Shown here one piece after another: positions 21,793 through 46,019 of a stretch of DNA of 54,487 nt. A program made the translations under genes and the position numbers. The notes under the pieces were generated by a model that was given only the letters and a program-made list of their open reading frames with translations, was not told the DNA's origin and did not search any database. How positions within the stretch are numbered: position 1 is the first letter of the stretch; each line of letters opens with the position of its first letter. The DNA is from Octopus bimaculoides (lineage: Eukaryota): assembly GCF_001194135.2 (NCBI RefSeq), contig NC_068983.1, forward strand, positions 23,378,497 through 23,432,983. The letters are read 5' to 3'.

Positions 21793-21819
21793 CATACATG
21801 CATACATGCATGCATACAT

Positions 21820-21886
<67 letters not shown>

Positions 21887-24681: not shown

Positions 24682-24721
<40 letters not shown>

Positions 24722-25056
24722 CACACGACGGTCTTCTTTCAGTTTCCGTCTACCAAATCCACTCACAAGGATTTGGTTGGCCTGAGACTATAGTAGAGGA
24801 CATATGTCCAAGGTGCCACATAATGGAACTGAACCCAAGATCACATGGTTGAGAAGCAAGGTTTTTAGTCACACAGCAATGCCTGCACCTATGAAATTGT
24901 TAAAAAACTATTTGTTAAAGAAATTTAACAACACTAAACAAACCATATTAACTACTCATATTTGGTAGGATTAACCCAACTAATTATATGATGGGCGTAA
25001 GTGGATTAATGCAACAAACAACCTTTAAGTAAATGTTGCAATATTAGTTTACCTTC

Positions 25057-25500: not shown

Positions 25501-25502
25501 AC

Positions 25503-25681
25503 CTTCTAATTCTTCCATAATTGGTCCAGCTTTACTCTGTTTAGGTGTTTTCATGAAAAGAGGAAATATTGTCCGGAGACCCAAAATATCAATAAATTTC
25601 TGACAGTTGTCTGCTCCTTCTGATCCTGTCATAGAATGGTTCAACACTTTAATAGCACTGTTACGAGACATTCGTTTCTCC
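25503..25681 (-). CDS. CTNNBL1: CTNNBL1 exon 11
   Basis: 179 nt after a poly-T acceptor tract; EKRMSRNSAIKVLNHSMTGSEGADNCQKFIDILGLRTIFPLFMKTPK...ELE. Confidence 0.96.
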
Positions 25682-26981: not shown

Positions 26982-27259
26982 GTATTGTAGTACAAGTAGA
27001 AAGATATATTTTTCAACACGTAAATACTGATAGAACAGTATACATGGGATAATATCCCTTACAGAGCAGAAGAATTTGTCAGTAAAGTAGTTTAGCTTAA
27101 TGGTAGAGCACTTGACCAGAAATCAAAGGGATGTGAGTTCCATTCTCATGGCTGGTTGCTGACAGATTTTTCTGCTTTGTAAGGGATATTATCCCATGTA
27201 TACTGTTCTATCAGTATTTACGCATTGAAAAATATATCTTTCTACTTGTACTACAATAC
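26982..27259. mobile_element. Foldback/MITE-like element: 101-bp inverted arms around a tRNA-like core
   Basis: Arms 26982-27082 and 27159-27259 pair at 96/101 positions; 76-nt spacer folds as a degenerate cloverleaf. Confidence 0.75.
27086..27157 (+). pseudogene. tRNA-like (pseudo-tRNA or SINE-head) sequence, anticodon position AGA
   Basis: D-arm GCTT/GAGC with A-box TAGCTTAATGG; anticodon stem TTGA/TCAA with loop CCAGAAA; T-arm GTGAG/CTCAT with loop TTCCATT; acceptor stem decayed. Not a functional tRNA (C33, no long variable arm for Ser). Confidence 0.55.
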
Positions 27260-27332
27260 TACTCCATGTCTTTTGTTCAGAATGTTACTTGTGTTAAAAG
27301 GAATTTCAATAAAATAGAATAATTTGTCAAAC

Positions 27333-27481
27333 CTGAGCATAAGATTCATCAGCTGTAGACCTTCTCCTTTTAGAAATTTGGCACGATTGCAGGGCAACAT
27401 CAAAGCAGAGCACAAACAATTGAACAAGTTTTCCATTAGTTCAATTTCATCTCTGTTAACAGGATCATGTCTTTTATAAGA
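27333..27481 (-). CDS. CTNNBL1: CTNNBL1 exon 10
   Basis: 149 nt; SYKRHDPVNRDEIELMENLFNCLCSALMLPCNRAKFLKGEGLQLMNLML(R); donor AG/gtttga. Confidence 0.96.
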
Positions 27482-27589
27482 CTATGCATAGAAATAAAAC
27501 AAATATAAATAAAATTAAAGCAATTAAAAATGAAAACAAAGAAACAAAAATAAGTTTCCAGATACCCATTGCTTCACATCTTTTGTGAT

Positions 27590-28760
27590 CAGTTTTGCCT
27601 ACATTGAGCTTTGTTTATTAGGAGAGAAACTCAGTGAGGAATAACATCTATAGAGACTTTGTGGGTCCTAGTTGTAGGCATTTTGTTTGATAAATGATTG
27701 TGCCTTTGTACTATTGAAAGAGATAAGGTTAGTATGACCCTGTGAGAAGATATTTTCAAGATCACTGTTCATAGATCACTGTTCATATAGATTTAGAGTG
27801 AAATATTTAGATTGCATATGGATGACACTTGGTTAGAGACAGTGGTTGTTGTTAGGGGTCATTGATGTATAATAGCGAAGGTTGGGGGATGAAAACTGAA
27901 CTTTATAAGTACACCAGAGTTAATAGATCTTCATCAGTACATACCACAATGGTGTGATCCGATAGTAGGAAACCACTGATCCAAGTGATGGAAGGGCAAC
28001 ATTACCGTTTTTATCAAATTTCATGAGTGTGAGAGCTCACTGGTGTGTGACATGAGAGAATAACTTTGCAGTAGATCTAGCTTTATAGAAACTGTATGAA
28101 TGGTTGTTTAGACAGGAGAAATTCGTGTCTTAATGACCACTAGCCATAATAGAGAAAGTTATTGTTGATGGCTGTTTCCATCGATTTTGAGATTCTAAAA
28201 GTGAATGTGATAAGTTGAAAGTTGGTAGGGTGAGAGGAGTTGCTCTACTTGGGTATAGAACACATTGTTGTGTTTTTAAAGATTAGGAGTTTGGTGAGAA
28301 TCGGAGCTAGTTCTGACGCACACTGAGAATAACAAAGGAACATTGTCAGGAGTAGAGGTCTTGTTGACCTAAAGCAACCAAAAGTGTTTTCACTCTGTGT
28401 TTGTGTGTGTGTGTATGTGTGGGGCTATGAGCGTAGAGGAAAGGAAGCAATGGTTTGCGAGGAGATTTATTAAGTGTGTGAAGTGTGGAATAGGATATAA
28501 AGTAGATGTGGAACCTTTCCTCACAGTTATACTGCTTACAGAACCATCATCAATGAGAAGAGGGAAAGAGGATTATGTCAAGTTAGTAGAGAACCTTTTG
28601 GGAAAGGACAAAAAGGAGTTTGAGTATCAGCAGGGTAACTTGTGGATAGGGCAATATACAAAAGCAACCTTCATGGTTTGGATGATAGTATTTGAGTTAA
28701 GATGAGTAAAAGTATTTAGGTTGTGGGTTGTATTCTTAGCCTGAACTGCTGCAGTGGAGC
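27590..28760 (-). mobile_element. Jockey/CR1-group LINE RT fragment
   Basis: PTNFQLITFTFRISKSMETAINN, WISGFL...INSGV...LLYIND, MNSDLENIF.QG.TNLISFNSTKAQ are decayed RT motifs. Confidence 0.65.
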
Positions 28761-29243
28761 TATGAATGAAGCACATAAAACTTATCTAAGTAAATATATT
28801 TAATCTGTATTGAACAAATTGATGTAAAGTGAAGTAAATAATTTTCTTTGTGAGACAAAATATATAACAACTAAATATCAAAGTAGACATCAAAACCATC
28901 AGTGTAATGTTTTTACAGCATCTAGAACTAATTTGTCACTTATGAGTACTTAAATGTTGATTTTAAATTATTTTATGCATATTTATAACAAATCATTAGC
29001 AAGAACTGCTTTACGTTAGTTTTATATGTTAAAATTAAACAGCAAACTTATACTGCATGATCCAAACCTCAAATGCACATTCCAAGACAAAAAATACTTG
29101 ACTTTTTGAAATAAAATTTATATATTTTATAGAACAACTGTATGTAAATACATACAAAGATTTTGAGATTTTCTAGAGTACTACAATTTATTCTACATTA
29201 TCACTTTCAAAATGTTACAATTTAAATATCGTTCATAACTTAC

Positions 29244-29302
29244 AGCTAATTGTTGGAGCAAAACATCAATTCCGTCTAGTTCACCAATATACTGTCTGTT
29301 TT
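29244..29302 (-). CDS. CTNNBL1: CTNNBL1 exon 9
   Basis: 59 nt; (E)NRQYIGELDGIDVLLQQLA; AG..GT. Confidence 0.96.
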
Positions 29303-29679
29303 CTGGAAAATAAGGAAGGAAGGAAGGGATATGTAGTTACATAAAACTGATATTCACATTTCAAGAATAAATAAACTTTAAAATAAATTACATTTTAATC
29401 TTTCCAACTAAATGATATATATATATATGTTAATACTCCACTGAAAAACCTGTGACAATACCCCACCCTATCATGTGTGGTATCAAATGTGATGAGGTGA
29501 TATTGCTGAATATACCATATTACAGCTTGTCACCATAGTGGCGCTACCTCCCTGCCAACATCCTGTCCAAGGAGGAGCACCTAAGAATAAAGAAAAGAAT
29601 CAATGTCGCTTCCACAGCATTCAAGATAACTAGGAGTTATCTTGAATTAGTCTCAGATACTGTTACTCTTCTCTAGATC

Positions 29680-29975
29680 ACCATCATCATTTAACGTCCA
29701 TTGTTCATACTGGCATGCGTTGGACAGTTTGACCAGGTCTGGCAAGCTGGAAGGCTGTACCAGACTCTAGTCTAATTTGGCATGGTTTTTATGGCTGGAT
29801 ACCCTTCCTAATGCCAACCCAAGAGTGTAATGGGTGCTTTTACGTGCCACCAGCATGAGTGCCAGTTACGTGACATCAGTGTCAGTCACAACTATGATTT
29901 CACTTGGCTTGACAGGTCTTCTCAAACACAGCATAATGCCAAAGATCTCGGTCATTTGTCATTGCCTCCATATCT
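29680..29975 (-). mobile_element. Family A RTE 3' end with ORF C-terminus
   Basis: EAMTNDRDLWHYAVFEKTCQAK*, then UTR and (GAT)n tail. Confidence 0.75.
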
Positions 29976-30494
29976 AATGAAATGAGTTTGTCTAATAAGC
30001 TCACGAAACTATGTTGATTCATTAACTCTTTATCAGTCCAGAACCATAGCCATAACATATAACCCTTAGTGGTCCAGCCCATCTTACATGTAACTTATAT
30101 CACATATGGTGGAATAAGCAGTATTTGCATTGTAAAGTGACAATTGTTTGATATGCATTGCTGTTACTGCTGTATTTAAATATTCCTATGGGATGTTCTG
30201 AAGAACAAGTTTTGGGTTCCACAAGCCTTGTGAATTCAACTTAAATACATTGTGGTGGTAGTAGCCATGGTCTTCAATTGTCAGTACGACAAAAACTCAA
30301 CATCTTTTCTGAGGGCTCAAGCTACAAGAAAATATATTCCTATTTATCAACTTTTACAGCTAAAAGTGATAATTTCTATTAGCTTTTGAGCTTTATAGAT
30401 ATCATCTTAAGACGGGCATGATACTTATAAGCAGTTTTGATATTTGTAAATTCTTTACTTGAAAGGATTCAGAAAAAAGATTCATATTGTAGAT

Positions 30495-30641
30495 ACAGGT
30501 GCAGGCATTCTAGCCACATGGTTTTGGGTTCAGTCCTACTCCATGGCACCTTGGGCAAGTGTCTTCTACTATGGCCTCAACCCAACCAAAGCCTTGTGAG
30601 TGGATCTGGTAGACAGAAACTGAAAGAAGCACATGATATAC

Positions 30642-30682
<41 letters not shown>

Positions 30683-30875
30683 NNNNNNNNNNATATATGT
30701 ATATATCTATGTGTAAATGTCTTTGTGTTCATGTTTTTTCCACCCAGCTGCTTAACAACCAGTGTTGGTGTGTTTATGTCTCCTTAACTTAGTGGTTTGG
30801 TAAAAGAGATCGCTAGAATAAGCACAAGGCTTTAAAACATGGCTCCAGTTAAATGATTGAAACAAGTAAATGATG
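30495..30875 (+). mobile_element. SINE family B with expanded internal (CA)n/(TA)n containing a 10-N gap
   Basis: Head GGTTCAGTCCTACTCCATGGCACCTTGGGCAAGTG; tail GATTGAAACAAGTAAA. Confidence 0.8.
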
Positions 30876-30925
30876 TGTAATGTACATTTGTACTATAACA
30901 TAAATAGATTGCTAAATATACTTAC

Positions 30926-30998
30926 CATCATGATTCTGAAGAAGGATCGACATTATTTCACAAGCATACAGTTTATTGGCATCAAAGGGTATTTTAGC
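30926..30998 (-). CDS. CTNNBL1: CTNNBL1 exon 8
   Basis: 73 nt; AKIPFDANKLYACEIMSILLQNHD; AG..GT. Confidence 0.96.
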
Positions 30999-31723
30999 CT
31001 GAAACCATGAAAGATTACAAATACATTTTAAGCTTAACTCAAACACAGCCATAAAAGCCATGCCAAAACAGACAGGAAAGCCTGGTGCAGTCCTCTGGCT
31101 TACCAGCTCCTGTCAAACTGTCCAACCCATGCTAGCATGGAAAACAGACATATGATGATGATGATGATGAAATTCACCCAGATATGTAAAATGTTGCCAA
31201 CATCATCATCATCAAACATTTGTTGCCCATGCTGGCACGGGTTAGGCAGTTTGACCAGAGCTGGCAAGACAGGGAGCTGCACCAGACTCTAGTTTGATTT
31301 GACATGGTTTCTACAGTTGGATACCATTCCTAACGCCAACCACTTTACAGAATGTGCTGGGTGCTTTTATGTGGCACTGCCACAAGTGCTTTTCACCACC
31401 AGAGGGAAATAATTGCTATACTTATTATCATTGTTAACATACCAGAAACAAAAACTATTAAACCCAGTAGTATAATACAGTTCTATATTTAAGGGATGAG
31501 GAATTATGTACATTATTTACAATTGACGGATATTTGTCCTCATCTTGTTTGTTGTTAACACAACATTTCGGCTGATATACCCTCAGGTGCCTTGGGGAAA
31601 TTTTTGAACCTAGGTTCTCATTCCTAAGGTATTATAACTCAACAATACTTATTTTTAATTCTGCTTGTAATTCATCTCATATTCATTTTCTTAATGAAGT
31701 ATTGCAAACCAAGAATAGATTAT

Positions 31724-31948
31724 TTAACCTGTTAGCATTTAGATTATTTTGTTAAATGTAATGTTTATTTATTCATGTTGTTTTGAATTAATCATGCATT
31801 ATCTTGTAACTTCAAGATTCTAATGATGTGATAGTTTATTTTTAGAAAGACATTGTAGGGTGGGTGTGAGGGGCCAAATTTGGCTAGTTTGAACATAAAG
31901 CGGGTTGAATTGGCTGGATATAGCCAGTTTAAATGCTAAAAGGGTTAA
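31724..31948 (-). mobile_element. TTAA-flanked MITE (family F), inverted copy
   Basis: TTAACCTGTTAGCATT ... AATGCTAAAAGGGTTAA; interior is the reverse complement of the 17244 copy. Confidence 0.75.
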
Positions 31949-32201
31949 CTAAACTTCAAAATAGACTAACAAGAAATATATCTACTAAATTAACGGCACA
32001 AAATTGATGAATTTTTACTTAGTTACTGGTTCAAAACTATACTCTTTGACAATAGTGTGTCATATAGAATGACTTGTAACAGGCCACTTGCACAAGTAAT
32101 TAATTGTAGAATTTTCTTTCTCACGTCAAAAATGAAAGAAAACACACACACACACACATGCACATGCACGCACACACACAAATTTTAAAATAAAAGTCTA
32201 C

Positions 32202-32293
32202 CTTCAATCGTTTTAAAATCCATTGCATTAAACCTTGTTGAGAAGAATCTGGACAAATCTCTGGACGGAACTCTGTGAGGTTTTCCATTATAC
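32202..32293 (-). CDS. CTNNBL1: CTNNBL1 exon 7
   Basis: 92 nt; (G)IMENLTEFRPEICPDSSQQGLMQWILKRLK; AG..GT. Confidence 0.96.
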
Positions 32294-33953
32294 CTGATAA
32301 AGCATTCAATACCATCATTTCAATTACTCAAATAAAATACACTCTTCCATTAAAAACTAGTATTATAGAGAATAATTAGACAACACTTTATTGCTGCCTA
32401 GTTGTCATCTATAATTAATATTAATCAGACCATACCTCAAATATGAAAACAGTTTAATCAATAAAGTTTTAAACTCTTAAGAAACTGTCAAATGAAACTG
32501 TGCGCAAACTAACAAAAGTTTGGGTCTTAAAAAAAAAGCTAAATCAATGAGTAAAGGTTTTAGTCTTAATGGCTAAGAGTGGATCCCCAATGCACTATTT
32601 AGTATTTGAACTCACCTGCTTCCAGTTGTTCTCAGTACTAGAATTTGAGTACAGAAAGTTTTTTTATAAGTGAATATGCTCTGATGTATGATATAATGTA
32701 ACAAAAAAAACAAAAACAAAAAAAACAACAACAAAACAAAACAAATAATTAGATAAAATCTAATCTATAACAGACAAATTAAATATAATAGAAACTGGGG
32801 GCAATTTGTGAAATATAAGGATTAATGAATACAAATCATCCCAAAGAGCTACTGAATGCAAAGTATGAGTTTAAACAAAGACGTTAATAGGGATGAACAA
32901 TCTTTTAATACCATCATTGTTTTAAGCCAGTTTCTCTATGCCATAGAGGATGATTCCAATACAACACCATCAGATCAGAACACACCATGGCTTCTTCAGT
33001 TTCATTGTAGGCTCCATTAGTATCTTCAGTTTGCTTTAAATACATTACGGCTAGTGGTAGACATAGTTTTTAATTCTTCAGTGGGTAGATGGTAGCAGTT
33101 TTATATTAAATTTTGCATTTTGTCCGCACAAGAAGACACTCAACAAAATTTTTTTTTCAATGATTTGATAGATTTTCAGTTTACTTTTACAGCTAACTAA
33201 AAGAAAACAAACTTAAAGCTTTCTGTTAAACTATTTACAATTTCAATAAGTTCTTTGGATTTAAGAACTTTATCAATTAATCTGTTATATTTGAGGGATG
33301 TTCAGATTAATGTTGTTTGATGATAAATGATAACTAGACAGCAATGAAGTATTGCTTAGTAATTAGTGTTATTCCATCTATATCATTTGACACAGTTTTA
33401 ATTAACTGCCATCTTTCATACACATTACATATCTGTAACAATGCAATCTTCTCTCTTACATACCAGACGAATCCATTGACGATCCTATTTTTGTCTCAGT
33501 TCACCTGTACTCTTGTTCATGAATGGAAGATATTACACATTCAATGAAGCATGTTCACTGTATTTCTTTACAGCCTTTGTGTATCATCCCCATTTAATTC
33601 CTATACCTCACTACCATGCAACACTGCACATTGCATACAAAGGTTTATATAATCTACTTAGTCACTAATACAGGCAAGATTAACCTTCATTTATTTATGC
33701 ATGAACTCAGCAAGTTTCTGAAACATTAACTAAACCACTTAAAACCAGTTGGAGCCTTTACATGGTCACTCAAACTGCTAAAAGTAGCAGGCAATTTTCC
33801 ATTAAGTAATATGTTTGCAAAAAAAAAAAAAAGCCTCAAACAAGATGGTCATGGCTAGAATGCTTTTGATCAAAGATCTGCTAGATGAAGACCAATCTGT
33901 AGTTAAACACAACACTTAGTTATGGGAAGTTAATAAGTTAATAGACACCTTAC

Positions 33954-34047
33954 CTAAAGTATTATGTACACCATCAGCCTCTTCCTTTACAGTTTCATCA
34001 AGCCTTTCCAGATTTTGAACCAGCAAAGCTACAATCTGTCCATCCAA
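33954..34047 (-). CDS. CTNNBL1: CTNNBL1 exon 6
   Basis: 94 nt; LDGQIVALLVQNLERLDETVKEEADGVHNTL; AG..GT. Confidence 0.96.
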
Positions 34048-34859
34048 CTGTGAAAATATATAAAATCACATGTGAAAAGTGTGTATGTATGCAGGCATGC
34101 TCTCGTGTATGTGTGTTGATGTTGATTCTAATGTATTTACTGACATGTGTATAGTGAACCATGATGTTGGCTTTGTACAATGTCTTTTATAGGGAAACAC
34201 TACGCTTTTGTATCAATTTGCTCACTAAGAAATAGAAACAACTGAAGTTATTTGTTGCTAGGAAAATCATTAGACTAATTACTAATTTATTTCTGAAAGA
34301 AAATATAAAAGAATATGACTTCATAATATAAAACCAAGTAAAAGTACTCAGAGCTGAAATTCAGTTTTCCCGATAACGTAGACTTGAGTGTCAAGGGACA
34401 TAACAAATGCCCCAAAGTTATTTTGTTTGTGTCCCCTCATGGTTTTGCCAACCTCTACCAACATGTATACTGTTGGCTCTCGTAGTCTGTGTTTCTGATT
34501 AATGGCTTCACATCGTTACAAGAATTTTCAGTAGCAAAAATAAAGAAGATTAATTTTTTTTAATTACAAAAAAAAAAAAATAAAAAAAAAATATGTGTAA
34601 CTCAATATGTGCTGCTTGTAAAAGATATCTGAGGAGATGAACGTGTCTTTCGATTGAGCCATAAGCCTATGCAATACATTGGAGAAAGCTAGCAACTTCA
34701 CCAACCCCACCAGCTTTTCTTGCTTAGTATCATTGTATTTATTTCATTTCAATATACCATTCTGTTATCAGCAAGTGAATGTTAATGAGACACTTTACCT
34801 CGCTCGTTACAAGTTCTTAAACAAGCAATAAATATATCATACATATAAATATATATCAT

Positions 34860-35105
34860 TGTTTATCATTGTTTTAACATCCACTTGTGCATGTTTGCAT
34901 GTGTCAGACAGAATTTACTGAGGCAGATTTTATAGAGCTGATGCCCTTCCTATTGTCAACTCATACTTGTTTTAAGCAAAACAATATTTTCCCATGGCTA
35001 GATACCTTTTTCCTGGAAAATGGTAAATGAATGACAATGTTTGTATGATGAGGACACTCATTTACAACTATTATGCAGTGCCAAGAGAAAGAGGCATAAA
35101 CACAC
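34860..35105 (-). repeat. Second RTE-tail-like dispersed repeat (family H)
   Basis: CATGYTTGCATGGGTCAGA..TTTACTGAGGCAGATTTT..GATGCCCTTCCT..AATATTTCCCCATGGC shared with about 26500-26720, 43565-43780, 47015-47260, 16480-16680. Confidence 0.6.
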
Positions 35106-35206
35106 TTGCAGTTGCTGATGCACTGAATACACAAACTACCATAGAAATTTGGGGACTCAAATTTCTGCTGCCTTATATATATGTGTGTGTGTGTGTGTGT
35201 ATATCA

Positions 35207-35547
35207 TCATTATCATTTAATGTCTGCTTTCCATGCTGGCTTGAGTTAGATGGTTTGACACTGAAATTAATAAGCTGAAGAGCTGCTCCAGGTTCCAGTC
35301 TGATTTGGCATGGTTTCTACAGCTGGATGCCCTTCCTAATGCCAACCACTCCAAGAGGGATGTAATGGGTGTTTTTACATGCCAGTTATGTGACACTGGT
35401 ATCAACCATGACTATGATTTCACTTGGCTTGATGAGTCTTCTCAAGCACAGCATATCGCCAAAAGTCTTGGTCACTTGTTATCACCTCTGTGAGGCCCAA
35501 CATTTAAAGATCGCACTTCACCACCTTGTCCCATGTCTTCCTGGTTA
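35207..35547 (-). mobile_element. Family A RTE 3' end with longer ORF remnant
   Basis: RKTWDKVVKCDL*MLGLTEVITSDQDFWRYAVLEKTHQAK*, then UTR and tail. Confidence 0.75.
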
Positions 35548-35933
35548 TATATATATGAATGACAAGCTTCTTTCAGTCTCAAACAAATCCACTTACAAGG
35601 CTTTGGCTGGTCATGGGCTTATAGCAGAACAAACTAACTTGTAAAATCAAGAATTGTCCCTGTGTATGTCTATGTGTGTATGAACATACACACAGATATA
35701 AAAATTGGCTTCTACACAGTTTCTGTCAACCAGATTTCATTCGCAAAGTCTTCAGCTGACTTAAGGCTATGGTAGAAGTTGACTCTCTGTGTGTCAAAGA
35801 TTTGAACCTGGATCGACATAATTGCAAAAAAAATATCTTAACCACATGACAAATCAGTAAATTAAAGATATTGGGGAGATGAAGAGGTGTCAGGCACTAG
35901 AAAATTTAAGTTAGAAGTTTCACTGATACTTAC

Positions 35934-36031
35934 TAATGCATCAACAAGGGCTGTTGCACCATCTTCACTTTCGTTTAAGGTATCCACATCAGTCAATTCC
36001 TGGATGAGGTCAACTACAGCAATTGAAATAT
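35934..36031 (-). CDS. CTNNBL1: CTNNBL1 exon 5
   Basis: 98 nt; (D)ISIAVVDLIQELTDVDTLNESEDGATALVDAL; donor gtaagt. Confidence 0.95.
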
Positions 36032-37222
36032 GTAATACTGTCAAGGAAACACACACTCCTGGTATAAATCTTGTCAGCATCCATTCATTAAACGAATTTA
36101 AATGAATATAACTTGAAACATTGTCTCGTGTCACTGACACTTTGATTCAAGAGGTTAATCCTGGTAAAACACATATTTTCAAGATCTACTTTTCCTAGAC
36201 AAAGGGTATCAGGCAATCAATACTGTTTATAGAAGGAAGAAACATTAGGTAGCTTCTACATGGTTACTGAACTTGCTAAATCTCCATCAAATTACATTTG
36301 TCTTGTCTCGAGAAAAAGAAACAAAAGACATAATGGATAATGCATTCCTAGATAACATTAATAATGGTCATGGCTAGAACATCTTCGATCATAGACTTGC
36401 TAGATGGATGTTGACCTCGGGCTAAAATCATCAAAAATTTGTTTGGTGATAAGTCCAACCACTAAAACCAAAAAATACTCACTGCGCTACGTGCTAAGTG
36501 CTGTTATTAGTTGAAGTAGTGCAATACTTAAAGCTAGATGCATTGTCACTGAGAGTTAAGTGTCTTGGCCATGAACTCAGTATAGAACTAGGAATTGCAT
36601 GTGAACTATTTACACTTTGATTCATTAAGCAGTACTTTGCCAATGCAACTGTGGCACTCTCTTTCACACATAGTATAAAGCCATTAAATTGTGTTAGTAA
36701 TAACACTTAAACCTTGCTAAAAACTAGTTATTGTACATTTTCATTGGGAAAGATATGTAAAATAGGATGTTGATCAAATGAAGGAGAGTTTTATTTGTAA
36801 AATAGAAAAAGAAATAATAAACAAAAGCAAACCTCCACCGAGGCAACACCAACGTCCTCCCAATGATTAACCGGAGATGTTTATTAAAATGAGAATAACT
36901 GAAATAAACTAGACTGCTCTAACAAACAAGAATACTAAAAATGAACCCGACTGTTCTCAAAAATTAAGTAAAAAAAACAGGAAAAATAATCTGGAATCCT
37001 TGTCTGGTACCGGATCGATCCCAAAATCTAATCAGGTTGTGCCAGTCACAAGGTAGACATCCCTGGAAGTTTTATCCGAATCCATGCAGCGGTTCTTGAG
37101 ATATCTTGTCCATGGACAAATAAACAAACAAACGTGGCTGAAAAAATTACCTCCGCCTTTGCTAAGGCGGAGGTAATAAAACACACAACAAACAAAAACA
37201 AGTTGTCATACACAAAGGATAT
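36032..37222 (-). other. CTNNBL1: U12-type (minor spliceosome) AT-AC intron 4 of CTNNBL1
   Basis: 5' ss /ATATCCTTTG (37222-37213); branch box TTCCTTGAC (36048-36040); 3' ss TAC/ (36034-36032). Splicing restores the conserved DNTDISIAVVDL. Confidence 0.93.
36825..37179 (-). mobile_element. Non-autonomous Helentron/HINE-like element inside the U12 intron
   Basis: Begins TTATTACCTCCGCC with a 14-bp hairpin (37146-37177), then a GTTT microsatellite-like tract, and ends GGTGGAGGTTTGC (inverted subterminal repeat 36831-36839). Family assignment from recalled architecture. Confidence 0.6.
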
Positions 37223-37362
37223 CAGTGTTGTCATGTGTTAATAACTGTAATAGTGACTGTACAGTGTTTAGTTCTACTAAAACATGATAGAGTGCAGGCA
37301 CAGTTGCTACCACATGCATTTCATGGAGGACATCATTCAGTTCCATTTCAGATTCCATAAAC
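37223..37362 (-). CDS. CTNNBL1: CTNNBL1 exon 4
   Basis: 140 nt; FMESEMELNDVLHEMHVVATVPALYHVLVELNTVQSLLQLLTHDNT+G, followed by the ATATCCTTT donor. Confidence 0.95.
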
Positions 37363-38055
37363 CTGTAAAAGAATATTACAGAACACATTATAAGAGAAGA
37401 AAGAATAAAATGTTCAACAGATGTAGTAATAAATAAATGCAGTATAGAAGAAGGAAAATGAAAATATATTTCTAATATGAATAGGTGTACTAGAATTAGC
37501 AAAATTTCATAATCTGCTTCTTGATTAGTTGTAATAATGAAGATACATTAAAAAATATGGTTATAGAAAATTGCAAACTTTAATCTGTCATATGAACTGA
37601 AATTTGTATATTAACATGAAAAAATGACCAAAAGCCTCCATTCTGATGCAGCTTTGGACATCAAATGAAGATATATTTGTAATTCTTGAATGATTTAAAA
37701 ATGATGAACTGATAAAAAATGTGATTAAAAAAAAAAAAAGACTTAGTAAAACGGTCACAAAAAATTGCCTCAGCTGGCTTTATCATCAGCTAACTCCCAA
37801 AACCCAGCACCTATTTCTCACCTACTGTATGTTCTACCAACAGTCAACCTGCCAGAATTCAAGCTGAACATAGATTGCATTGAAAATCTCCTATGTAAGA
37901 TACTTGTAAATGTTACAGGCATTAACACCTCTGCCTAGAGTAAAATGTAATTAAAAAAAAAAAAAAAAAATCCAACTATTGCACAATCTAGAAATATCCA
38001 ACAAAACCATTACGACAAAGTAGAAGGTTTAAAAAAAGTATTGTATTATGTTTAC

Positions 38056-38162
38056 TTTTCTGGCATATCAGGAAATTTGACTCTCATTTCTTGATTTTTG
38101 TAGACTCGTTTTTCAAATTGAAGCAGCATTCTTTTCAGAGCAATTTCATCCAGAACATCAAT
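38056..38162 (-). CDS. CTNNBL1: CTNNBL1 exon 3
   Basis: 107 nt, AG..GT; IDVLDEIALKRMLLQFEKRVYKNQEMRVKFPDMPE(K). Confidence 0.96.
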
Positions 38163-38380
38163 CTGTAAGGTAAGCAGAAAATATTTGATCTATATTTTAA
38201 CAATAATTTCATTTCATGTAATAATTCTGATCATATTTGCCTACCAATTGATCTCAGTTAATTGGACTGCAGCTATGCTGGAGCTCATTGTCTTCAAGGG
38301 TTTTAATTGAGCATAATAGTTTGAAAAAATTTGCAATATTTCATCAACCACCAAGTTTTATATTGTGTTCTTGTAAAGTA

Positions 38381-38765
38381 TTTTACTCTTTTGCTTGTTT
38401 CAGTCATTTGACTGTGGCCATGCTGGAACACCACCTTTAGTCGAGCAAATCGACCCCAGGACTTATTCTTTGGAAGCCTAGTACTCATTCTATCGGCCTC
38501 TTTTGCCGAACCGCTAAGTTACGGGGATGTAAACACACCAGCATCGGTTGTCAACTGATAGTGGGGGGACAAACACAGACACATAAACATATACACACAC
38601 ATACATATATACGACGGACTTCCTTCAGTTTCCGTCTACCAAATCCACTCACAAGGCATTGGTCGGCCCAAGGCTATAGTAGAAGATACTTGCCCAAGGT
38701 GCCACGCAGTGGGACTGAACCCAGAACCATGTAGTCGGTAAGCAAGCTACTTACTACACAGCAAC
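38381..38765 (-). mobile_element. SINE family B, full length, abutting an RTE ORF fragment
   Basis: Same head, internal microsatellite and tail as the 13041 copy. Confidence 0.85.
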
Positions 38766-38789
38766 CACATAATTTGGGATTCAGTCTCA

Positions 38790-39135
38790 CTTTGACCCTT
38801 GTCTTACTGGGTGTCCTGCTTCCACAAGTTCCATCCACTTTAAGTGATTGGCACTTCTTTAAGCAACTGTCCTCATCCATATGCATCACATGATCAAACC
38901 AGCACAGTCTTTTCTCTTGCATACTGCATCTAATTCCTCATATGCCTAACTTTTTTCTCAATACACTAGCACTCTGTTGTACATGTACACTGACACTGCG
39001 CAGCCAACAGAGCATATTAGGTCCTTCCCCTCTAGTCTTTGCATGTCCTCTGCATTCAGGGCCCATGTCTCTTAGAGAGAGAAACTTCTGGCTGCCAACA
39101 GAGATAAAAGCTCTTTGAAATTTTTTCATTTTATT
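38790..39135 (-). mobile_element. RTE LINE RT C-terminal fragment
   Basis: SVSVHVQQSASVLRKKLGI..MQEKRLCWFDHVMHMDEDSCLKKCQSLKVDGTCG; a + strand equivalent is at about 52021-52190. Confidence 0.8.
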
Positions 39136-39309
39136 CTTATTCTAGCAATTACACTTTCAGTACATCCTCCTCCACTACTAATTAAGTCACTTAGGTAGCA
39201 GTAATTAGCCACTACCTAAAATTTAAATATTCATATACTGAAGTGAATACACACACACACGTTTAAAAACATATATATAATCGAAATCATAATTGAACCA
39301 AATTTGATG

Positions 39310-39746
39310 ACTGGCACCCGTGCCAGTGGAGCGCTAACAGCACTGTCCGAGTGTGATCATTGCCAGGGCAGCTGTCTGGCTTCTGTGCCGGTGGCACGTA
39401 AATAGCATCATTTGAGCATGATTGTTACCAGTGTCGCCTTACTGGCACGTGAAAAATCATTTGAGCGAGGTCATTACCTCTGGACTGGCTCCTGCGCAGG
39501 TGGCACGTAAAAAACACCATTTGAGTGCAGCTATTGCCAGTACCACCTGACTGGCCGTCATGCCGGTGGCACGTAAAAGCACCCATTACACTCTCGGAGT
39601 GGTTGGCATTAGGAAGGGTATCCAGTTGTAGAAACTCTGCCAGATCAGATTGGAGCCTGGTGCAACCATCTGGTTCGCCAGTCCTCAGTCAAATCGTTCA
39701 ACCCATGCTAGCATGGAAAGCGGACATTAAACGATGATGATGATGA
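39310..39746 (+). mobile_element. Family A RTE 3' UTR with four GGCACGT modules and (GAT)n tail
   Basis: Repeated GGCACGT(A/G)AA units, most followed by CATTTGAG; terminal GCATGGAAAGCGGACATTAAACGATGATG. Confidence 0.8.
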
Positions 39747-40004
39747 ATCATAATGAGTGATGTAAAAGTATCCTCTGCGCAGCTTTATATTAATGATTCT
39801 TCTCTAAATCTTACTTCTTAGAGTAGTTTAAATAGTGATGACTATGATTCTACTAGATTACTAGTGCAGTTCACAAAATAATGAGATGGCCTTTGTTTAA
39901 TTGTTTTCATTATTGTTATTATTAATAGTACATTTAAGAATCCATCCAATTCATGCCAACATGAGAAATGGACTTAAAAACGAACGAATGAAATTCATAC
40001 TAAC

Positions 40005-40184
40005 CTCAGGCTCTTCATCCTCAACTATCTGAGCAATTTTGACACGAGTCTCTTCAGACAACTGAGATTCAGCTTTCATCAGATCATTTTCTGATAATTT
40101 ACTTTTCTTAGGATAGTCACTTTCGTTATCATTTTCACCTTCATAATGTCGCTGCCTTTTATGACTGAATCCAGGTTTTTCTGG
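40005..40184 (-). CDS. CTNNBL1: CTNNBL1 exon 2
   Basis: 180 nt, tatag acceptor, GAG/gttagt donor. PEKPGFSHKRQRHYEG...PKKSK...IVEDEEPE (basic NLS-like then acidic). Confidence 0.9.
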
Positions 40185-40185
40185 C

Positions 40186-40187
<2 letters not shown>

Positions 40188-40226
<39 letters not shown>

Positions 40227-40362
40227 CAATAAAGTGATAATAATTATTTCAAATGTTTGTCACGAGGGCAGCTTGGGGGAGGTGGGGATGAGTCGACTAC
40301 ATCAATCCCAGTGTTCAATTGGTACTTTTATTGAGTTCGAAAGGATGAAAGGCAAAGTCGCT
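40188..40362 (-). mobile_element. SINE family C 3' part with (TTA)n tail reaching the CTNNBL1 exon 2 acceptor
   Basis: Reverse complement of GCGACTTTGCCTTTCATCCTTTCG...GACTCATCCCCACCTCCCCCAAG, then an ATT-repeat tail ending at TAG/ 40185. Confidence 0.7.
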
Positions 40363-41265
40363 TTGATAATAATAATAATAATACAAACACTAATACAACA
40401 AAAGACTGCACCGCACCCCATAAAAAAAAAAAAAAAAACAGAAACTGATGCAATGCAATACTGGGAAGTTTGTACACTCCCAACAACAAAAATAGAACAC
40501 ACAATGCTGCACATACTCCAGCAACACGGAGGTGTAGTAGAAATTGCCAGAAACTAACAATGATAATAATAAAAATAATAGTAATAACAACAACAACCCA
40601 CAAACACAAGACACACTTTACACAATAAATATCCAATAAGATAAACAACCTCCACGACATGTACTCTAGAGGCCATACACCCAACAGAAGAACACAACTC
40701 GCATTACACACACAACACACACTAATACAACATAAGGCTGCAACCAAAGCCCATAACAAAACAAACATGCAATACAAAACCAGGAAGAGCTTGCACTCCC
40801 CCAACAGTAAAAATGAACACACAATGCTGCACACACATCAGGTGTAGCAGGTGATGCAGTAGAAATCTGCTTGAAACTATCAAATGTCAAATAATAAAAA
40901 TAATAATGGTTTCAAATTTTGGCACAAGGCCAACAACTTTTTTGGGGGTGGGGATAAGTCTTATTTTATCAACCCAGTAAGGTTGAGAGGTGAAGTTAAC
41001 CCCAGCAATATTTGAACCTAGAATGTAAAGACGGATGGATGTTGCTAAACGTTTCACCTGGTGTGCTAACGGTTCTGCCAGCTCACCACCATAATCATCA
41101 TCATCATTTAACGTCCGCTTTCCATGCTAGCATGGGATGGATGATTTGACTGAGGACTGGTGAACCAGATGGCTACACCAGGCTCCAATCTGATTTGGCA
41201 GAGTTTCTACAGCTGGATGCCCTTCCTAATGCCAACCACTCCGAGAGTGTAGTGGGTGCTTTAAC

Positions 41266-41304
<39 letters not shown>

Positions 41305-41308
<4 letters not shown>

Positions 41309-41493
41309 GTCCTTTCTACTATAGGTACTAGGCCTGAAATTTTAGGGAAGGGGGCCAGTTGATTCGATTGACCTCGAAAGGATGAAAGGCAAAATCGATC
41401 TCAGCAGAATTTGAACTCAGAACGTAACGGCAGATGAAATACCGCTAAGCATTTCGCCCAGCATGCTAACGATTCTGCCAGCTTGCCACCTTC

Positions 41494-41495
<2 letters not shown>
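41305..41495 (-). mobile_element. SINE family C, young-looking copy between (TAA)n tracts
   Basis: AAGCTGGCAGAATCGTTAGCATGC...TTACGTTCTGAGTTCAAATTC...GCCTTTCATCCTTTCGAGG. Confidence 0.8.
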
Positions 41496-41529
<34 letters not shown>

Positions 41530-42544
41530 TAGTAGTAATAGTAGTAGAAGATGATGATAGCTTTTGCTTAATTGACAATGTTTTCAAAAGAATCAAAAAT
41601 GATAAATGTACAAAATGGATGAGAAAAATGCAATAATACAAAGAACATAATTAAGATAACTTGAAAGTACTTTAGCAACTTAAATTTCTAGTTAAACCAG
41701 TACACAAGAGGTTGTAGTAACGATATTTAGTGAATAAATAAAGAATCAATCAGCTGACCAATAACTATTAATTCTCTAAAACAAAAACAAATTTTTGCAT
41801 AAGCTTTACATACAAACAACCTGCTTACCAGTAATATATATATATCCCTGATACATACAGGATGAGGTGAAAGTCATGTGCCATAGGAATTAATTAATTA
41901 ATAATGTTTTAAATGTCTAATTTCTTCTGATATCTTCTTATTTGCGGAAACAATTTTGATGAATTAAGATGAGTGAAAAACTAACAAAGGATGAATGAGT
42001 TATCTTTGTGTTCATGTATTGGAAAGCAGATGCTACTCACAGATCTGTTTAAGAGGAACTCAACAGGCAGAATTGATAAGTGTAATTAATCCTTTTAAAG
42101 AAACTAGTAGTGTTGCTGACCGCCCTTGAAGCAGCAGACCAAAAAGTGCAACCAATCCAACATCAATGGTGGAATTGAAAATGAATGCAGTAAAATAACA
42201 GAGGAAACTCTGATGTGTTAACCCTTTAGTGTTCAGATTACTCTATCAGATACTCTTTTACTTGTTTCAGTCATTTTGACTGCGGCCATGCTGGAGCACC
42301 GCCTTTAGTCGAGTAAATCGCCCCCAGGACTTATTCTTTGGAAGCCTAGTACTTATTCTATCGGTCTCTTTTGCTGAACCGCTAAGTTACGGGGACGTAA
42401 ACACACCAGCATCGGTTGTCAAGCGATGGTGGGGGTGGGGACAAACACAGACACACAAACACATACATATATATACATATCCACTCATAAGGTTTTGGTT
42501 GGCCTGAGGCTATAAAGAAACACTTGCACAAGTTGTCACACAGT

Positions 42545-43499
42545 NNNNNNNNNNNNNNNNNNNNNNNNNNNNNNNNNNNNNNNNNNNNNNNNNNNNNNNN
42601 NNNNNNNNNNNNNNNNNNNNNNNNNNNNNNNNNNNNNNNNNNNNNNNNNNNNNNNNNNNNNNNNNNNNNNNNNNNNNNNNNNNNNNNNNNNNNNNNNNNN
42701 NNNNNNNNNNNNNNNNNNNNNNNNNNNNNNNNNNNNNNNNNNNNNNNNNNNNNNNNNNNNNNNNNNNNNNNNNNNNNNNNNNNNNNNNNNNNNNNNNNNN
42801 NNNNNNNNNNNNNNNNNNNNNNNNNNNNNNNNNNNNNNNNNNNNNNNNNNNNNNNNNNNNNNNNNNNNNNNNNNNNNNNNNNNNNNNNNNNNNNNNNNNN
42901 NNNNNNNNNNNNNNNNNNNNNNNNNNNNNNNNNNNNNNNNNNNNNNNNNNNNNNNNNNNNNNNNNNNNNNNNNNNNNNNNNNNNNNNNNNNNNNNNNNNN
43001 NNNNNNNNNNNNNNNNNNNNNNNNNNNNNNNNNNNNNNNNNNNNNNNNNNNNNNNNNNNNNNNNNNNNNNNNNNNNNNNNNNNNNNNNNNNNNNNNNNNN
43101 NNNNNNNNNNNNNNNNNNNNNNNNNNNNNNNNNNNNNNNNNNNNNNNNNNNNNNNNNNNNNNNNNNNNNNNNNNNNNNNNNNNNNNNNNNNNNNNNNNNN
43201 NNNNNNNNNNNNNNNNNNNNNNNNNNNNNNNNNNNNNNNNNNNNNNNNNNNNNNNNNNNNNNNNNNNNNNNNNNNNNNNNNNNNNNNNNNNNNNNNNNNN
43301 NNNNNNNNNNNNNNNNNNNNNNNNNNNNNNNNNNNNNNNNNNNNNNNNNNNNNNNNNNNNNNNNNNNNNNNNNNNNNNNNNNNNNNNNNNNNNNNNNNNN
43401 NNNNNNNNNNNNNNNNNNNNNNNNNNNNNNNNNNNNNNNNNNNNNNNNNNNNNNNNNNNNNNNNNNNNNNNNNNNNNNNNNNNNNNNNNNNNNNNNNNN
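42545..43499. other. Largest assembly gap
   Basis: N-run. Other gaps: 4534-4700, 15661-15918, 30683-30692, 44607-45196, 46928-47010, 47757-48268. No coding exon appears missing, since both CDSs join in frame. Confidence 0.99.
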
Positions 43500-43777
43500 C
43501 CTATACAATATAATAATAAAACTTTTTAGTGCCCTGACATAGCCATGTACGACAAAACAGTACAATTATCATCGTAATTTTAAAGAACACTTTTCCATGC
43601 TTGCATGGGTCAGACAGAGTTTACTGAAGTAGATTTTTTTACAACTGGATGTTCTTCCTGTAACCAACCCTCACCTATATCCAAGCAACATAATATTTCC
43701 TTATTGCCAGACGTTTCCACAGAAAATTGGAAATGAATGCCACTGCTGGTAAGACAGTGACATTCACAACTATCAGT

Positions 43778-43813
<36 letters not shown>

Positions 43814-44256
43814 CCACTCATAAGGTTTTGGTTGGCCTGAGGCTATAAAGAAACACTTGCACAAGTTGTCACACAGTAAGACTGAACCCAGAACCTTGTG
43901 GTTGGGAAGCAACCTTCTTACCCCACAATCATGCCTGCACCTTATGTACTGGTTTTGGTACAGTTTTGTACATATTGTTCTGTTTCCATATGGAAATATC
44001 TGTATATTGTCCAGTGGTTATAATTACCAACTTATTAATATACATGATGATGATCATCATCATCGTTTAACATCCGCCTTCCATGCTGGCATTGGTGGGA
44101 CGGTTTGACAAAAGCTGGCTAGGCAGAAGCCTGCACCAGACTTCTGTAACTGTTTTAGCAAGATTTTTACAGCTGGATGCCCTTCCTAATACCAACCATT
44201 CAGCAGAGTGGACTTAGTGCTTTTTACGTGACACAAGCACAGGCACGATATATGTA

Positions 44257-44298
<42 letters not shown>

Positions 44299-45196
44299 TA
44301 CATATATCGTGGACTCTCCCATTGTTAGATGACGTATGAGGATTTGGCAATTTCTTGCTGAACAACCACACACAAGATTTGTTTATAGTGATCAAATGTT
44401 TGTGTAGACATAAGCACCTGAACAGGTGCACTGTGTTCCACGTCTGATTCTGAAATGATCGCAGAGCAACATGAAATGAAGTGCTTTGCTCAAGAACACA
44501 ACGCAATGCCCGGTCTAGGAATTGAACTCATGATCTTGCAATTGTGAGTGTAACACTCTAACCACTAAGCCATGCACCATCACTATATATATATATATAT
44601 ATATATNNNNNNNNNNNNNNNNNNNNNNNNNNNNNNNNNNNNNNNNNNNNNNNNNNNNNNNNNNNNNNNNNNNNNNNNNNNNNNNNNNNNNNNNNNNNNN
44701 NNNNNNNNNNNNNNNNNNNNNNNNNNNNNNNNNNNNNNNNNNNNNNNNNNNNNNNNNNNNNNNNNNNNNNNNNNNNNNNNNNNNNNNNNNNNNNNNNNNN
44801 NNNNNNNNNNNNNNNNNNNNNNNNNNNNNNNNNNNNNNNNNNNNNNNNNNNNNNNNNNNNNNNNNNNNNNNNNNNNNNNNNNNNNNNNNNNNNNNNNNNN
44901 NNNNNNNNNNNNNNNNNNNNNNNNNNNNNNNNNNNNNNNNNNNNNNNNNNNNNNNNNNNNNNNNNNNNNNNNNNNNNNNNNNNNNNNNNNNNNNNNNNNN
45001 NNNNNNNNNNNNNNNNNNNNNNNNNNNNNNNNNNNNNNNNNNNNNNNNNNNNNNNNNNNNNNNNNNNNNNNNNNNNNNNNNNNNNNNNNNNNNNNNNNNN
45101 NNNNNNNNNNNNNNNNNNNNNNNNNNNNNNNNNNNNNNNNNNNNNNNNNNNNNNNNNNNNNNNNNNNNNNNNNNNNNNNNNNNNNNNNNNNNNNNN

Positions 45197-45244
<48 letters not shown>

Positions 45245-45809
45245 TATATAGCAATATGTGTGTGTGTGTCTGTGTTTGTCCCCCACCAACACTTGACAAC
45301 TAGTGCTAGTGTATTTATGTCCCTGTAACTTAGCAGTTCGGAAAAAGAGACTGGCAGAATAAGAACCATGCTTAAAATAAAAGTACTGGGGTTGATTTGT
45401 TTAACTAAAATTCTTCAATCCGGTGCTCCAGCATGGCTGCAGTTTAATAGTTAAATGACTGAAACAAGTAAAAGATAAAAGATGACACTGATATAATTGG
45501 AATAATCTGGGAAATGTATGTCCTGACTGGTAAAGCAGGACAATGTGAGTTGCTCAGATATTACAATCAAAGACAGAAATGAAGACATCCATTGATACAC
45601 ATTTCAATTCCTTCTGATCAAAACATTATCATGAAAGGAGCCACCAAAGATGTCAAAATACAAGAGCCTCAAAATGGAAGCAGGATGGGATACAAGAGTA
45701 CAAAATAGTAGTGCACTGGATATGCACAAACACAAAAGTCATACCAGGGCTCGCACAACACACAACCCCAAAAGTTAGTCTTACTAAATATGGTAACATA
45801 ACTCAGTTG

Positions 45810-46019
45810 AATTAAACCCAATAAAGTACTGCTTATTTATTCACATAATTTTGAATTAATCATATATTGTCTCATAGCTTCAAGACTTCGATGAACTGAT
45901 TGTTTATTTTTAGAATGACATTTTAGGGTAGGTGTGAGAAGCTGTATCTGGCCAGTTTGAACATAAAACAGATAGAATATTTGGGCTGGATATGGCCAGT
46001 TTAAATGCTAAAGGGTTGA
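45810..46019 (-). mobile_element. TTAA-flanked MITE (family F), one end decayed
   Basis: Ends TTTAAATGCTAAAGGGTTGA; interior matches 31724-31948. A terminal fragment of the family is also at 42218-42250. Confidence 0.65.

What the first reader, a model, noticed from the sequence alone, without database searches (positions are those of the whole stretch)
36032..37222. Minor-spliceosome AT-AC intron inside a core spliceosome gene
Seen: /ATATCCTTTG donor, TTCCTTGAC branch box 8 nt before TAC/, and the conserved DNTD-ISIAVV junction restored. Established: these are the U12-type consensus signals, and CTNNBL1 belongs to the PRP19/CDC5L complex. I recall vertebrate CTNNBL1 also having a minor intron here (unverified). 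Inference: an ancient intron that lets minor-spliceosome activity limit a splicing factor; likely mis-annotated by GT-AG-only predictors. ATAT at both junctions makes alignments ambiguous.
Basis: partly seen in the sequence, partly recalled or inferred. Interest (0 to 1): 0.7.

Follow-up and report, generated by a model that had tools for sequence, protein, structure and literature searches.

The report
Known minor-spliceosome intron in octopus CTNNBL1
Intron 4 of the octopus CTNNBL1 gene is a textbook AT-AC minor-spliceosome (U12-type) intron, but it is the same ancient intron already described in vertebrate CTNNBL1 and is already spliced correctly in the public octopus annotation, so it is real but ordinary.

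Summary
On the minus strand, exon 4 (37362-37223) is followed by /ATATCCTTT. A TTCCTTGAC branch box lies at 36048-36040, and the intron ends in AC at 36032. Joining 37223 to 36031 restores ...HDNTD|ISIAVV..., which aligns without gaps to human CTNNBL1.

It is the only non-GT-AG intron among the gene's 15, and it has no polypyrimidine tract. The AT-AC-spliced 559-aa model is 100% identical to NCBI XP_052822052.1 (Octopus bimaculoides), so this genome is not mis-annotated.

The same position and phase carries an AT-AC U12-type intron in O. vulgaris, oyster, amphioxus and the vertebrate Callorhinchus. It is a GT-AG U12 subtype in one unidentified species, a U2-type intron in Limulus, and absent in a sea star. 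It is therefore at least bilaterian in age and orthologous to the published vertebrate CTNNBL1 U12 intron (Janice et al. 2013).

The idea that the intron throttles a splicing factor is untested, and CTNNBL1 is dispensable for cell viability. No octopus RNA evidence could be obtained. Verdict: genuine and already known, low interest.

The parts
19124..50261 (-). CTNNBL1 coding region: 16 coding exons, 559 aa, 15 introns (14 GT-AG and 1 AT-AC)
   Evidence: Gene model built. It aligns end to end with human CTNNBL1 7abi_S (E 3.9e-220) and is 100% identical to XP_052822052.1 of Octopus bimaculoides.
37223..37362 (-). Exon 4 (140 nt), ending ...CAT GAC AAC ACT G (first base of the Asp codon)
36032..37222 (-). 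Intron 4: 1191 nt, phase 1, AT-AC termini, U12-type
   Evidence: orthologous introns
37214..37222 (-). U12-type 5' splice site ATATCCTTT (intron positions +1 to +9)
   Evidence: Identical 9-mer in O. vulgaris, oyster, amphioxus, Callorhinchus, L001 and L002.
36040..36048 (-). Branch-site box TTCCTTGAC. The presumed branch adenosine is at 36041, 9 nt before the 3' junction.
36032..36033 (-). 3' terminal AC dinucleotide, with no polypyrimidine tract upstream
35934..36031 (-). Exon 5 (98 nt), starting AT ATT TCA (completes Asp, then ISIAVV...), followed by a GTAAGT donor
37206..37208 (-). In-frame TGA reached after 5 codons (DILCV*) if intron 4 is retained
37210..37211 (-). Cryptic GT 11 nt inside the intron. 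Paired with the AG at 36000-36001 in exon 5, it gives the -7-aa 'DILCELTDVD' product seen in the O. vulgaris gene model.
36000..36001 (-). Cryptic AG inside exon 5 (…ATCCAG|GAA), used by the GT-AG mis-model

Best explanation
Intron 4 of Octopus bimaculoides CTNNBL1 is a constitutive U12-type (minor-spliceosome) intron of the AT-AC subtype, inherited from at least the bilaterian ancestor. It is orthologous to the known U12 intron of vertebrate CTNNBL1.

Inferred mechanism, from established knowledge of U12 splicing:
1. The U11/U12 di-snRNP recognises the rigid 5' splice site ATATCCTTT and the branch box TTCCTTGAC together.
2. The adenosine at 36041 is the branch nucleophile.
3. U6atac replaces U11 at the 5' splice site.
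4. The 3' site is chosen by its short distance (9 nt) from the branch, without a polypyrimidine tract.
5. G37223 is joined to A36031, rebuilding the GAT (Asp) codon.

Shown here: the signals, their exact placement, the gapless restoration of the conserved protein, positional orthology across phyla, and agreement with the public annotation. Inferred: that the octopus minor spliceosome actually removes it. The most economical view of its persistence is neutral retention of an old intron in an old gene. It need not have a dedicated regulatory role.
For: - 5' splice site, branch box and AC at the exact frame-restoring positions.
- It is the only non-GT-AG intron of 15, and the only one without a pyrimidine tract.
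- The spliced protein aligns end to end with human CTNNBL1 (E 3.9e-220) and is 100% identical to XP_052822052.1.
- Every in-frame GT-AG alternative nearby inserts or deletes 3-29 residues.
- The same codon position and phase carries ATATCCTTT plus TCCTTRAY 9-10 nt before AC in O. vulgaris, another octopod, an unidentified species (L001), Crassostrea virginica, Branchiostoma lanceolatum and Callorhinchus milii. One unidentified species (L012) has GTATCCTTT...TCCTTGAC...AG.
- In four orthologues this is the only U12-like donor at an exon end.
- An oyster transcript contig is joined exactly at ...ACAG|ATATCTC....
- Janice et al. 2013 report the CTNNBL1 U12 intron in 41 of 41 vertebrates.
- Molluscs, including Octopus sinensis, retain many conserved minor introns (PMC10639083).
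Against: - There is no RNA-level evidence from octopus.
- Minor snRNA genes could not be looked for, because only this window is available; none lie in it.
- From my own recollection of the literature, 9 nt from branch A to the junction is at the short end of the usual range. It is, however, the same 9-10 nt in all AT-AC orthologues.
Confidence: 0.93

Rival explanations
1. The region is removed by the major (U2-type) spliceosome using nearby GT...AG sites. One option is GT at +11 joined to the AG 32 nt into exon 5, as in the O. vulgaris gene model. Another is the nested GT(+9)/AG(-6) pair.
For: In-frame, stop-free GT-AG pairs exist. One of them is used in the deposited O. vulgaris model CAI9719238.1.
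Against: - Every such pair changes the length of a segment that is gapless from octopus to human: +5, +11, -3, -7, -20 or -29 aa.
- There is no polypyrimidine tract.
- The +9/-6 pair goes out of frame in the related octopod L002, which has an extra T.
- NCBI models for O. bimaculoides and O. sinensis, and the models for Argonauta and Acanthosepion, all use the AT-AC junction.
Confidence: 0.03
2. One reading: the U12 intron is kept because it is a regulatory throttle. Slow or conditional minor splicing, or retention followed by a premature stop and decay, would limit the amount of the NTC protein CTNNBL1. That would couple major-spliceosome composition to minor-spliceosome activity.
For: - Retention gives a stop after 5 codons.
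- The intron has kept its U12 type in molluscs, amphioxus and vertebrates.
- U12 splicing has been proposed as rate-limiting, and other splicing-factor genes (SRSF10, SNRNP48, RNPC3, NCBP2) use U12 elements in regulation (PMC8329584).
- Human CTNNBL1 has a U2/U12 twintron.
Against: - No expression or retention data are available here.
- The intron has been converted to U2-type in Limulus and deleted in a sea star, rotifer-like and pancrustacean-like sequences and Drosophila, while the gene itself persists.
- There is no extra-conserved intronic block between octopus species.
- The human U2 alternative is restricted to mammals.
- Larue & Roy conclude that the functional bias of minor-intron genes mostly reflects gene age.
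- CTNNBL1 is dispensable for cell viability.
Confidence: 0.12
3. It is a chance resemblance: the motifs occur by accident in an AT-rich intron.
For: Each 9-mer alone occurs at about the frequency seen in shuffled sequence. Two other RTATCCTT hits in the window are not at exon ends.
Against: The two motifs sit exactly at the two ends of one conserved exon pair. The same arrangement recurs at the same codon in seven other genomes from three phyla.
Confidence: 0.01

Closest known systems
U12-type intron of vertebrate (human) CTNNBL1 (Janice, Jakalski & Makalowski 2013, PMC3564746)
   Same: Same gene, and the same codon position and phase: Asp of ...NTD|V/ISIAVV, human D156|V157 by alignment. Callorhinchus has the same AT-AC subtype with ATATCCTTT and TCCTTAAC. 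The paper calls the U12 intron ancestral and finds it in 41 of 41 vertebrates.
   Different: In mammals the U12 intron lies within an alternative U2-type intron (a twintron, giving a 376-aa isoform). There is no sign of a conserved competing U2 pair in octopods. I did not inspect the human genomic sequence itself. The link rests on Callorhinchus plus the paper.
Canonical AT-AC U12-type introns in general, as defined in reviews such as PMC8329584 and classified by intronIC in PMC10639083
   Same: Rigid /ATATCCTT 5' splice site, TCCTTRAY branch box close to the 3' end, no polypyrimidine tract, AC terminus, non-zero phase.
   Different: Nothing distinctive. The branch-to-3' distance of 9 nt is on the short side (from my own recollection of the literature).
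Regulatory U12 elements in splicing-factor genes (SRSF10 nested introns, SNRNP48/RNPC3 USSE, NCBP2; PMC8329584)
   Same: A minor-spliceosome signal sits inside a gene for a splicing-related protein, so crosstalk between the two spliceosomes is conceivable.
   Different: Those cases have conserved competing splice sites or U11-binding enhancers with demonstrated isoform switching. None of that is seen or testable here.
Drosophila prospero twintron (U2-type intron nested in an AT-AC U12 intron)
   Same: A GT(+9)...AG(-6) pair is nested inside the AT-AC intron in O. bimaculoides and O. vulgaris, and would add 5 aa.
   Different: The nested pair is out of frame in a related octopod and has no pyrimidine tract. 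There is no evidence that it is used.

Membership tests
U12-type (minor-spliceosome) intron, AT-AC subtype | 5' splice site matching /RTATCCTT directly at the exon end | tested here: met
   ATATCCTTT at 37222-37214, immediately after exon 4
U12-type (minor-spliceosome) intron, AT-AC subtype | Branch-site box TCCTTRAY a short distance upstream of the 3' splice site | tested here: met
   TTCCTTGAC at 36048-36040, with the branch A 9 nt from the junction. The spacing is 9-11 nt in all U12 orthologues.
U12-type (minor-spliceosome) intron, AT-AC subtype | AT-AC terminal dinucleotides | tested here: met
U12-type (minor-spliceosome) intron, AT-AC subtype | No polypyrimidine tract before the 3' splice site | tested here: met
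   The 3' end reads ...CCAGGAGTGTGTGTTTCCTTGACAGTATTAC. The other 14 introns mostly have T/C-rich tracts before AG. This is a qualitative comparison.
U12-type (minor-spliceosome) intron, AT-AC subtype | Positional orthology with an accepted U12 intron | tested here: met
   Same codon and phase as the Callorhinchus, amphioxus and oyster AT-AC introns. The vertebrate CTNNBL1 U12 intron is published.
U12-type (minor-spliceosome) intron, AT-AC subtype | Observed excision at these boundaries in RNA, dependent on U11/U12/U4atac/U6atac | not testable with these tools
No octopus transcript ORFs are in the collection. The only indirect evidence is an oyster mRNA contig with the orthologous junction and the NCBI model.
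U12-type (minor-spliceosome) intron, AT-AC subtype | Host genome encodes the minor snRNAs | not testable with these tools
   Only the 54-kb window is available, and Rfam finds no snRNA in it. The literature reports conserved minor introns in Octopus sinensis and enrichment in molluscs.
CTNNBL1 (beta-catenin-like protein 1, Prp19/CDC5L-complex associated) | Full-length sequence homology to CTNNBL1, including the PF08216 domain | tested here: met
   E 3.9e-220 over residues 1-559 against human 1-563. PF08216 is precomputed on the hits, and the model is 100% identical to XP_052822052.1.
U2/U12 twintron (as in human CTNNBL1 or Drosophila prospero) | Conserved competing U2-type splice sites that overlap the U12 intron and are used in RNA | tested here: inconclusive
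   In-frame nested GT-AG pairs exist, but the +9/-6 pair is not frame-conserved in a related octopod. Whether any pair is used cannot be tested without RNA data.

The most novel reading that the evidence does not exclude
The intron's U12 identity has been held for more than 500 million years in molluscs, cephalochordates and vertebrates because it forms a feedback link. In this reading, CTNNBL1 is an NTC-associated protein that depends on minor-spliceosome output for its own mRNA, and retention leads to a stop after 5 codons. Minor-spliceosome activity would then tune activation of the major spliceosome.
Probability: 0.08. Interest if true: 0.5.

Novelty: already known. Interest (0 to 1): 0.15.

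Why it matters
It matters mainly for annotation quality and as a worked example of minor-intron evolution. It does not reveal a new kind of element.

One ancestral intron position shows four fates across animals:
- kept as AT-AC in octopods, oyster, amphioxus and a shark relative;
- switched to the GT-AG U12 subtype in one unidentified species;
- converted to U2-type in horseshoe crab;
- deleted in a sea star and several other lineages.

In practice, predictors that allow only GT-AG introns damage this junction. The deposited Octopus vulgaris model loses 7 conserved residues there, and several fish, reptile and amphibian models are mis-joined or truncated at it. Those models could be corrected using the AT-AC junction.

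Tried and rejected
- **RNA-seq junction support.** I did not try to get round that with read laying.
- **Octopus transcript ORFs spanning the junction.** Three protein searches found none; the best non-annotation hits are 75% identical or less.
- **Lingula locus (L009).** It is truncated and has no exon 4/5 hit.
- **Bat 'gene' (P0288/L013).** It turned out to be an intronless retrocopy, so I have no mammalian genomic example.
- **Origin before bilaterians.** Distant hits are transcript-derived or continuous ORFs, so plant, fungal or cnidarian introns could not be examined.
- **Other RTATCCTT hits (+5452, -2938).** They are not preceded by coding exons.
- **Conserved regulatory block inside the intron.** The O. 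bimaculoides/O. vulgaris alignment is roughly 85-95% identical along most of its length, with no stand-out block.
- **Palindromic hairpin at 37146-37177.** Its exact form is not kept in O. vulgaris, and it recurs nowhere else.
- **Dispersed repeats.** None of the window's SINE-like copies lies in intron 4.
- **Nested GT-AG twintron.** The pair is not frame-conserved.

Full report
**What is in the sequence.** Read on the minus strand, the window shows an exon ending ...CAT GAC AAC ACT G at 37223, followed directly by ATATCCTTTG. Further on, TTCCTTGAC lies at 36048-36040, followed by AGTATTAC ending at 36032. A new exon then starts ATATTTCAATTGCT at 36031. Joining 37223 to 36031 rebuilds a GAT codon and gives FMESEMELNDVLHEMHVVATVPALYHVLVELNTVQSLLQLLTHDNTD|ISIAVVDLIQELTDVDTLNESEDGATALVDAL. 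That peptide aligns without a gap to residues 110-188 of human CTNNBL1 in spliceosome entry 7abi (E 1.6e-32). One detail needs correcting: the box is followed by 8 nt up to and including the terminal AC, so the presumed branch adenosine (36041) is 9 nt from the junction. The ATAT ambiguity is real. The intron begins ATATCC and exon 5 begins ATATTT, so five placements give the same mRNA, and only the first has AT-AC termini.

**Chance.** RTATCCTTT occurs twice in both strands of the window against 1.49 expected from shuffles, and TTCCTTRAC once against 1.07 expected. Neither motif is remarkable by itself, and the two other RTATCCTT hits (+5452, -2938) do not follow coding exons. What is far beyond chance is that the two motifs sit at the two ends of one conserved exon pair, at the only positions that restore the reading frame without an indel. 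My estimate from those densities is about 1e-9 for a given exon pair.

**The gene.** I reconstructed the whole gene on the minus strand: 16 coding exons from 50261 to 19124, encoding 559 aa. Fourteen introns are GT-AG, mostly with T/C-rich 3' ends. Intron 4 alone is AT-AC and has no pyrimidine tract. The protein aligns end to end with human CTNNBL1 (E 3.9e-220). It is 100% identical to NCBI XP_052822052.1 and XP_014785410.1 and to UniProt A0A0L8FZN0, 'beta-catenin-like protein 1 [Octopus bimaculoides]'. The window is therefore almost certainly O. bimaculoides, and the public annotation already uses the AT-AC junction.

**Rival splice sites.** I enumerated every GT/GC...AG pair near the two ends that keeps the frame open. 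Each one changes the length of the conserved segment, by +5, +11, -3, -7, -20 or -29 aa. The +11/+32 pair gives ...DNTDILCELTDVD..., which is exactly what the deposited O. vulgaris model CAI9719238.1 contains. The O. vulgaris DNA nevertheless has the same ATATCCTTTGT...TTCCTTAACAGTGTTAC signals. Several vertebrate models (Larimichthys, Tachysurus, Notechis, Mantella, two turtles) are also mis-joined or truncated at this very point.

**Comparative evidence.** ORF fragments called on genomic contigs of other species read through into the intron. Ten end ...NTD|IL (G|ATATCCTT), four end ...NTG|IL (G|GTATCCTT), and eight end ...NTG followed by other residues (U2-like). Many others are continuous across the junction. 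I checked this at the DNA level in fetched loci. At the identical codon position and phase:
- ATATCCTTT plus TCCTTRAY 9-10 nt before AC is present in O. vulgaris, another octopod (Logan contig), an unidentified species (L001), Crassostrea virginica (206 nt), Branchiostoma lanceolatum (1401 nt) and the vertebrate Callorhinchus milii (314 nt).
- An unidentified species (L012) has the GT-AG U12 subtype: GTATCCTTT...TCCTTGAC...CTAG.
- Limulus has a U2-type intron there (GTACAT...TTCAG, no box).
- The sea star Patiria has no intron at this position.

In Callorhinchus, amphioxus, oyster and O. vulgaris this is the only U12-like donor that lies at an exon end. A Logan transcript contig from an oyster is colinear with ten exons of the C. 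virginica locus and is joined at ...GAAAACACAG|ATATCTCAATAG. This is transcript-level proof of the orthologous junction.

**What is already known.** Janice et al. 2013 list human CTNNBL1 among genes with a U12-type intron in a twintron arrangement. They find the U12 intron in 41 of 41 vertebrates from human to lamprey, call it ancestral, and report it deleted in Drosophila CG11964. The review PMC8329584 repeats this. Larue & Roy 2023 classified minor introns in more than 3000 genomes, including Octopus sinensis. They found molluscs relatively rich in them, described loss versus conversion and the phase bias away from phase 0, and argued that the functional bias of minor-intron genes mainly reflects gene age. 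The octopus intron is thus the orthologue of a published intron, in a lineage known to keep minor introns, and it is correctly modelled in RefSeq.

**Mechanism and function.** The best-supported explanation is ordinary U12-dependent splicing. The U11/U12 di-snRNP recognises ATATCCTTT and TTCCTTGAC together, branching occurs at A36041, and the AC 9 nt downstream is used. This follows from established knowledge of the pathway and from the sequence signals; it was not demonstrated with octopus RNA. If the intron is retained, translation stops after five codons (DILCV*, TGA at 37208-37206). A throttle on CTNNBL1 output is therefore conceivable, and slow U12 splicing has been proposed as rate-limiting in other genes. 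Several observations weigh against a special regulatory role:
- The intron has been converted or deleted in several lineages that keep the gene.
- The intron body shows no extra-conserved block between octopus species.
- The mammalian U2 alternative is lineage-restricted.
- CTNNBL1, though a bona fide Prp19/CDC5L-complex protein seen in pre-Bact structures, is inessential for cell viability in vertebrate B-cell lines and fission yeast. 'Core' is therefore too strong a word.

**Limits.** No octopus RNA evidence could be obtained. I did not see human genomic DNA; the link to the human intron rests on Callorhinchus and on the paper. A bat 'gene' fetched for this purpose proved to be an intronless retrocopy. 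An origin earlier than bilaterians could not be tested.

**Verdict.** It is already known in substance and already annotated, so its interest is low. The useful by-products are a clean four-fate example of minor-intron evolution at one position, and a list of gene models that are damaged at this junction.

Noticed in passing
L010 (Octopus vulgaris OX597816.1) 14886-16470; protein P0210 = CAI9719238.1: The deposited O. vulgaris CTNNBL1 model reads DNTDILCELTDVD, losing SIAVVDLIQ. It used a GT 11 nt inside the AT-AC intron and an AG 32 nt inside exon 5, although the DNA has intact U12 signals. It also lacks 11 residues near position 390.
   Followed up: yes
Proteins P0257 (Larimichthys crocea), P0217 (Tachysurus ichikawai), P0295 (Notechis scutatus), P0300 (Mantella aurantiaca), P0314 and P0321 (sea turtles): Vertebrate CTNNBL1 gene models are mis-joined or begin abruptly at exactly the NTD|VSIAVV junction. 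This fits predictors failing on the AT-AC intron.
   Followed up: partly
window 14239-14730 (+): An exon of the neighbouring gene for the mitochondrial Rieske iron-sulfur protein (UQCRFS1), E 6e-39 to solved structures. It lies on the opposite strand, downstream of the CTNNBL1 3' end.
   Followed up: partly
window 27086-27157 (+), inside CTNNBL1 intron 10: Rfam tRNA match at 37 bits, above the gathering score, but ARAGORN calls nothing. It is probably a tRNA-derived repeat or pseudogene.
   Followed up: partly
window, e.g. 6085-6247, 10552-10721, 15475-15654, 16002-16181, 24530-24684, 39573-39744, 41094-41265, 54246-54418: A SINE-like dispersed repeat of about 175 nt occurs in at least 16 copies at 70-94% identity on both strands. 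None lies in intron 4.
   Followed up: partly
window 37146-37177 (-), inside intron 4: A near-perfect palindrome (TTACCTCCGCCTTAGCAAAGGCGGAGGTAA) folds into a 14-bp hairpin at -23.6 kcal/mol. The exact form is not kept in O. vulgaris, and it is not repeated elsewhere in the window.
   Followed up: partly
window 4534-4700, 15661-15918, 30683-30692, 42545-43499, 44607-45196, 46928-47010, 47757-48268: Seven assembly gaps (runs of N). 2140 N lie in the 10-kb first intron of CTNNBL1, which is also rich in microsatellites.
   Followed up: no
L007 (Limulus polyphemus) 27755-28027; L008 (Patiria miniata) 3281-3285; fragments P0031, P0033, P0035, P0036, P0039, P0040, P0042, P0045, P0051: The ancestral U12 intron is a U2-type GT-AG intron in horseshoe crab and is absent in the sea star. 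In pancrustacean-like sequences (e.g. Armadillidium) it is absent, but another intron lies 10 codons downstream (…DLLQ|V…).
   Followed up: partly
L013 (bat Cnephaeus nilssonii JAULJE010000013.1) 201-824: The annotated 'hypothetical protein QTO34_004095' is an intronless, diverged retrocopy of CTNNBL1. It preserves the spliced NTD|VSIAVV junction.
   Followed up: partly
Protein P0209 = XP_052822053.1 (O. bimaculoides isoform X2): A second annotated isoform starts at Met46 of the 559-aa protein, giving 514 aa. It differs only at the N-terminus and is unrelated to intron 4.
   Followed up: no
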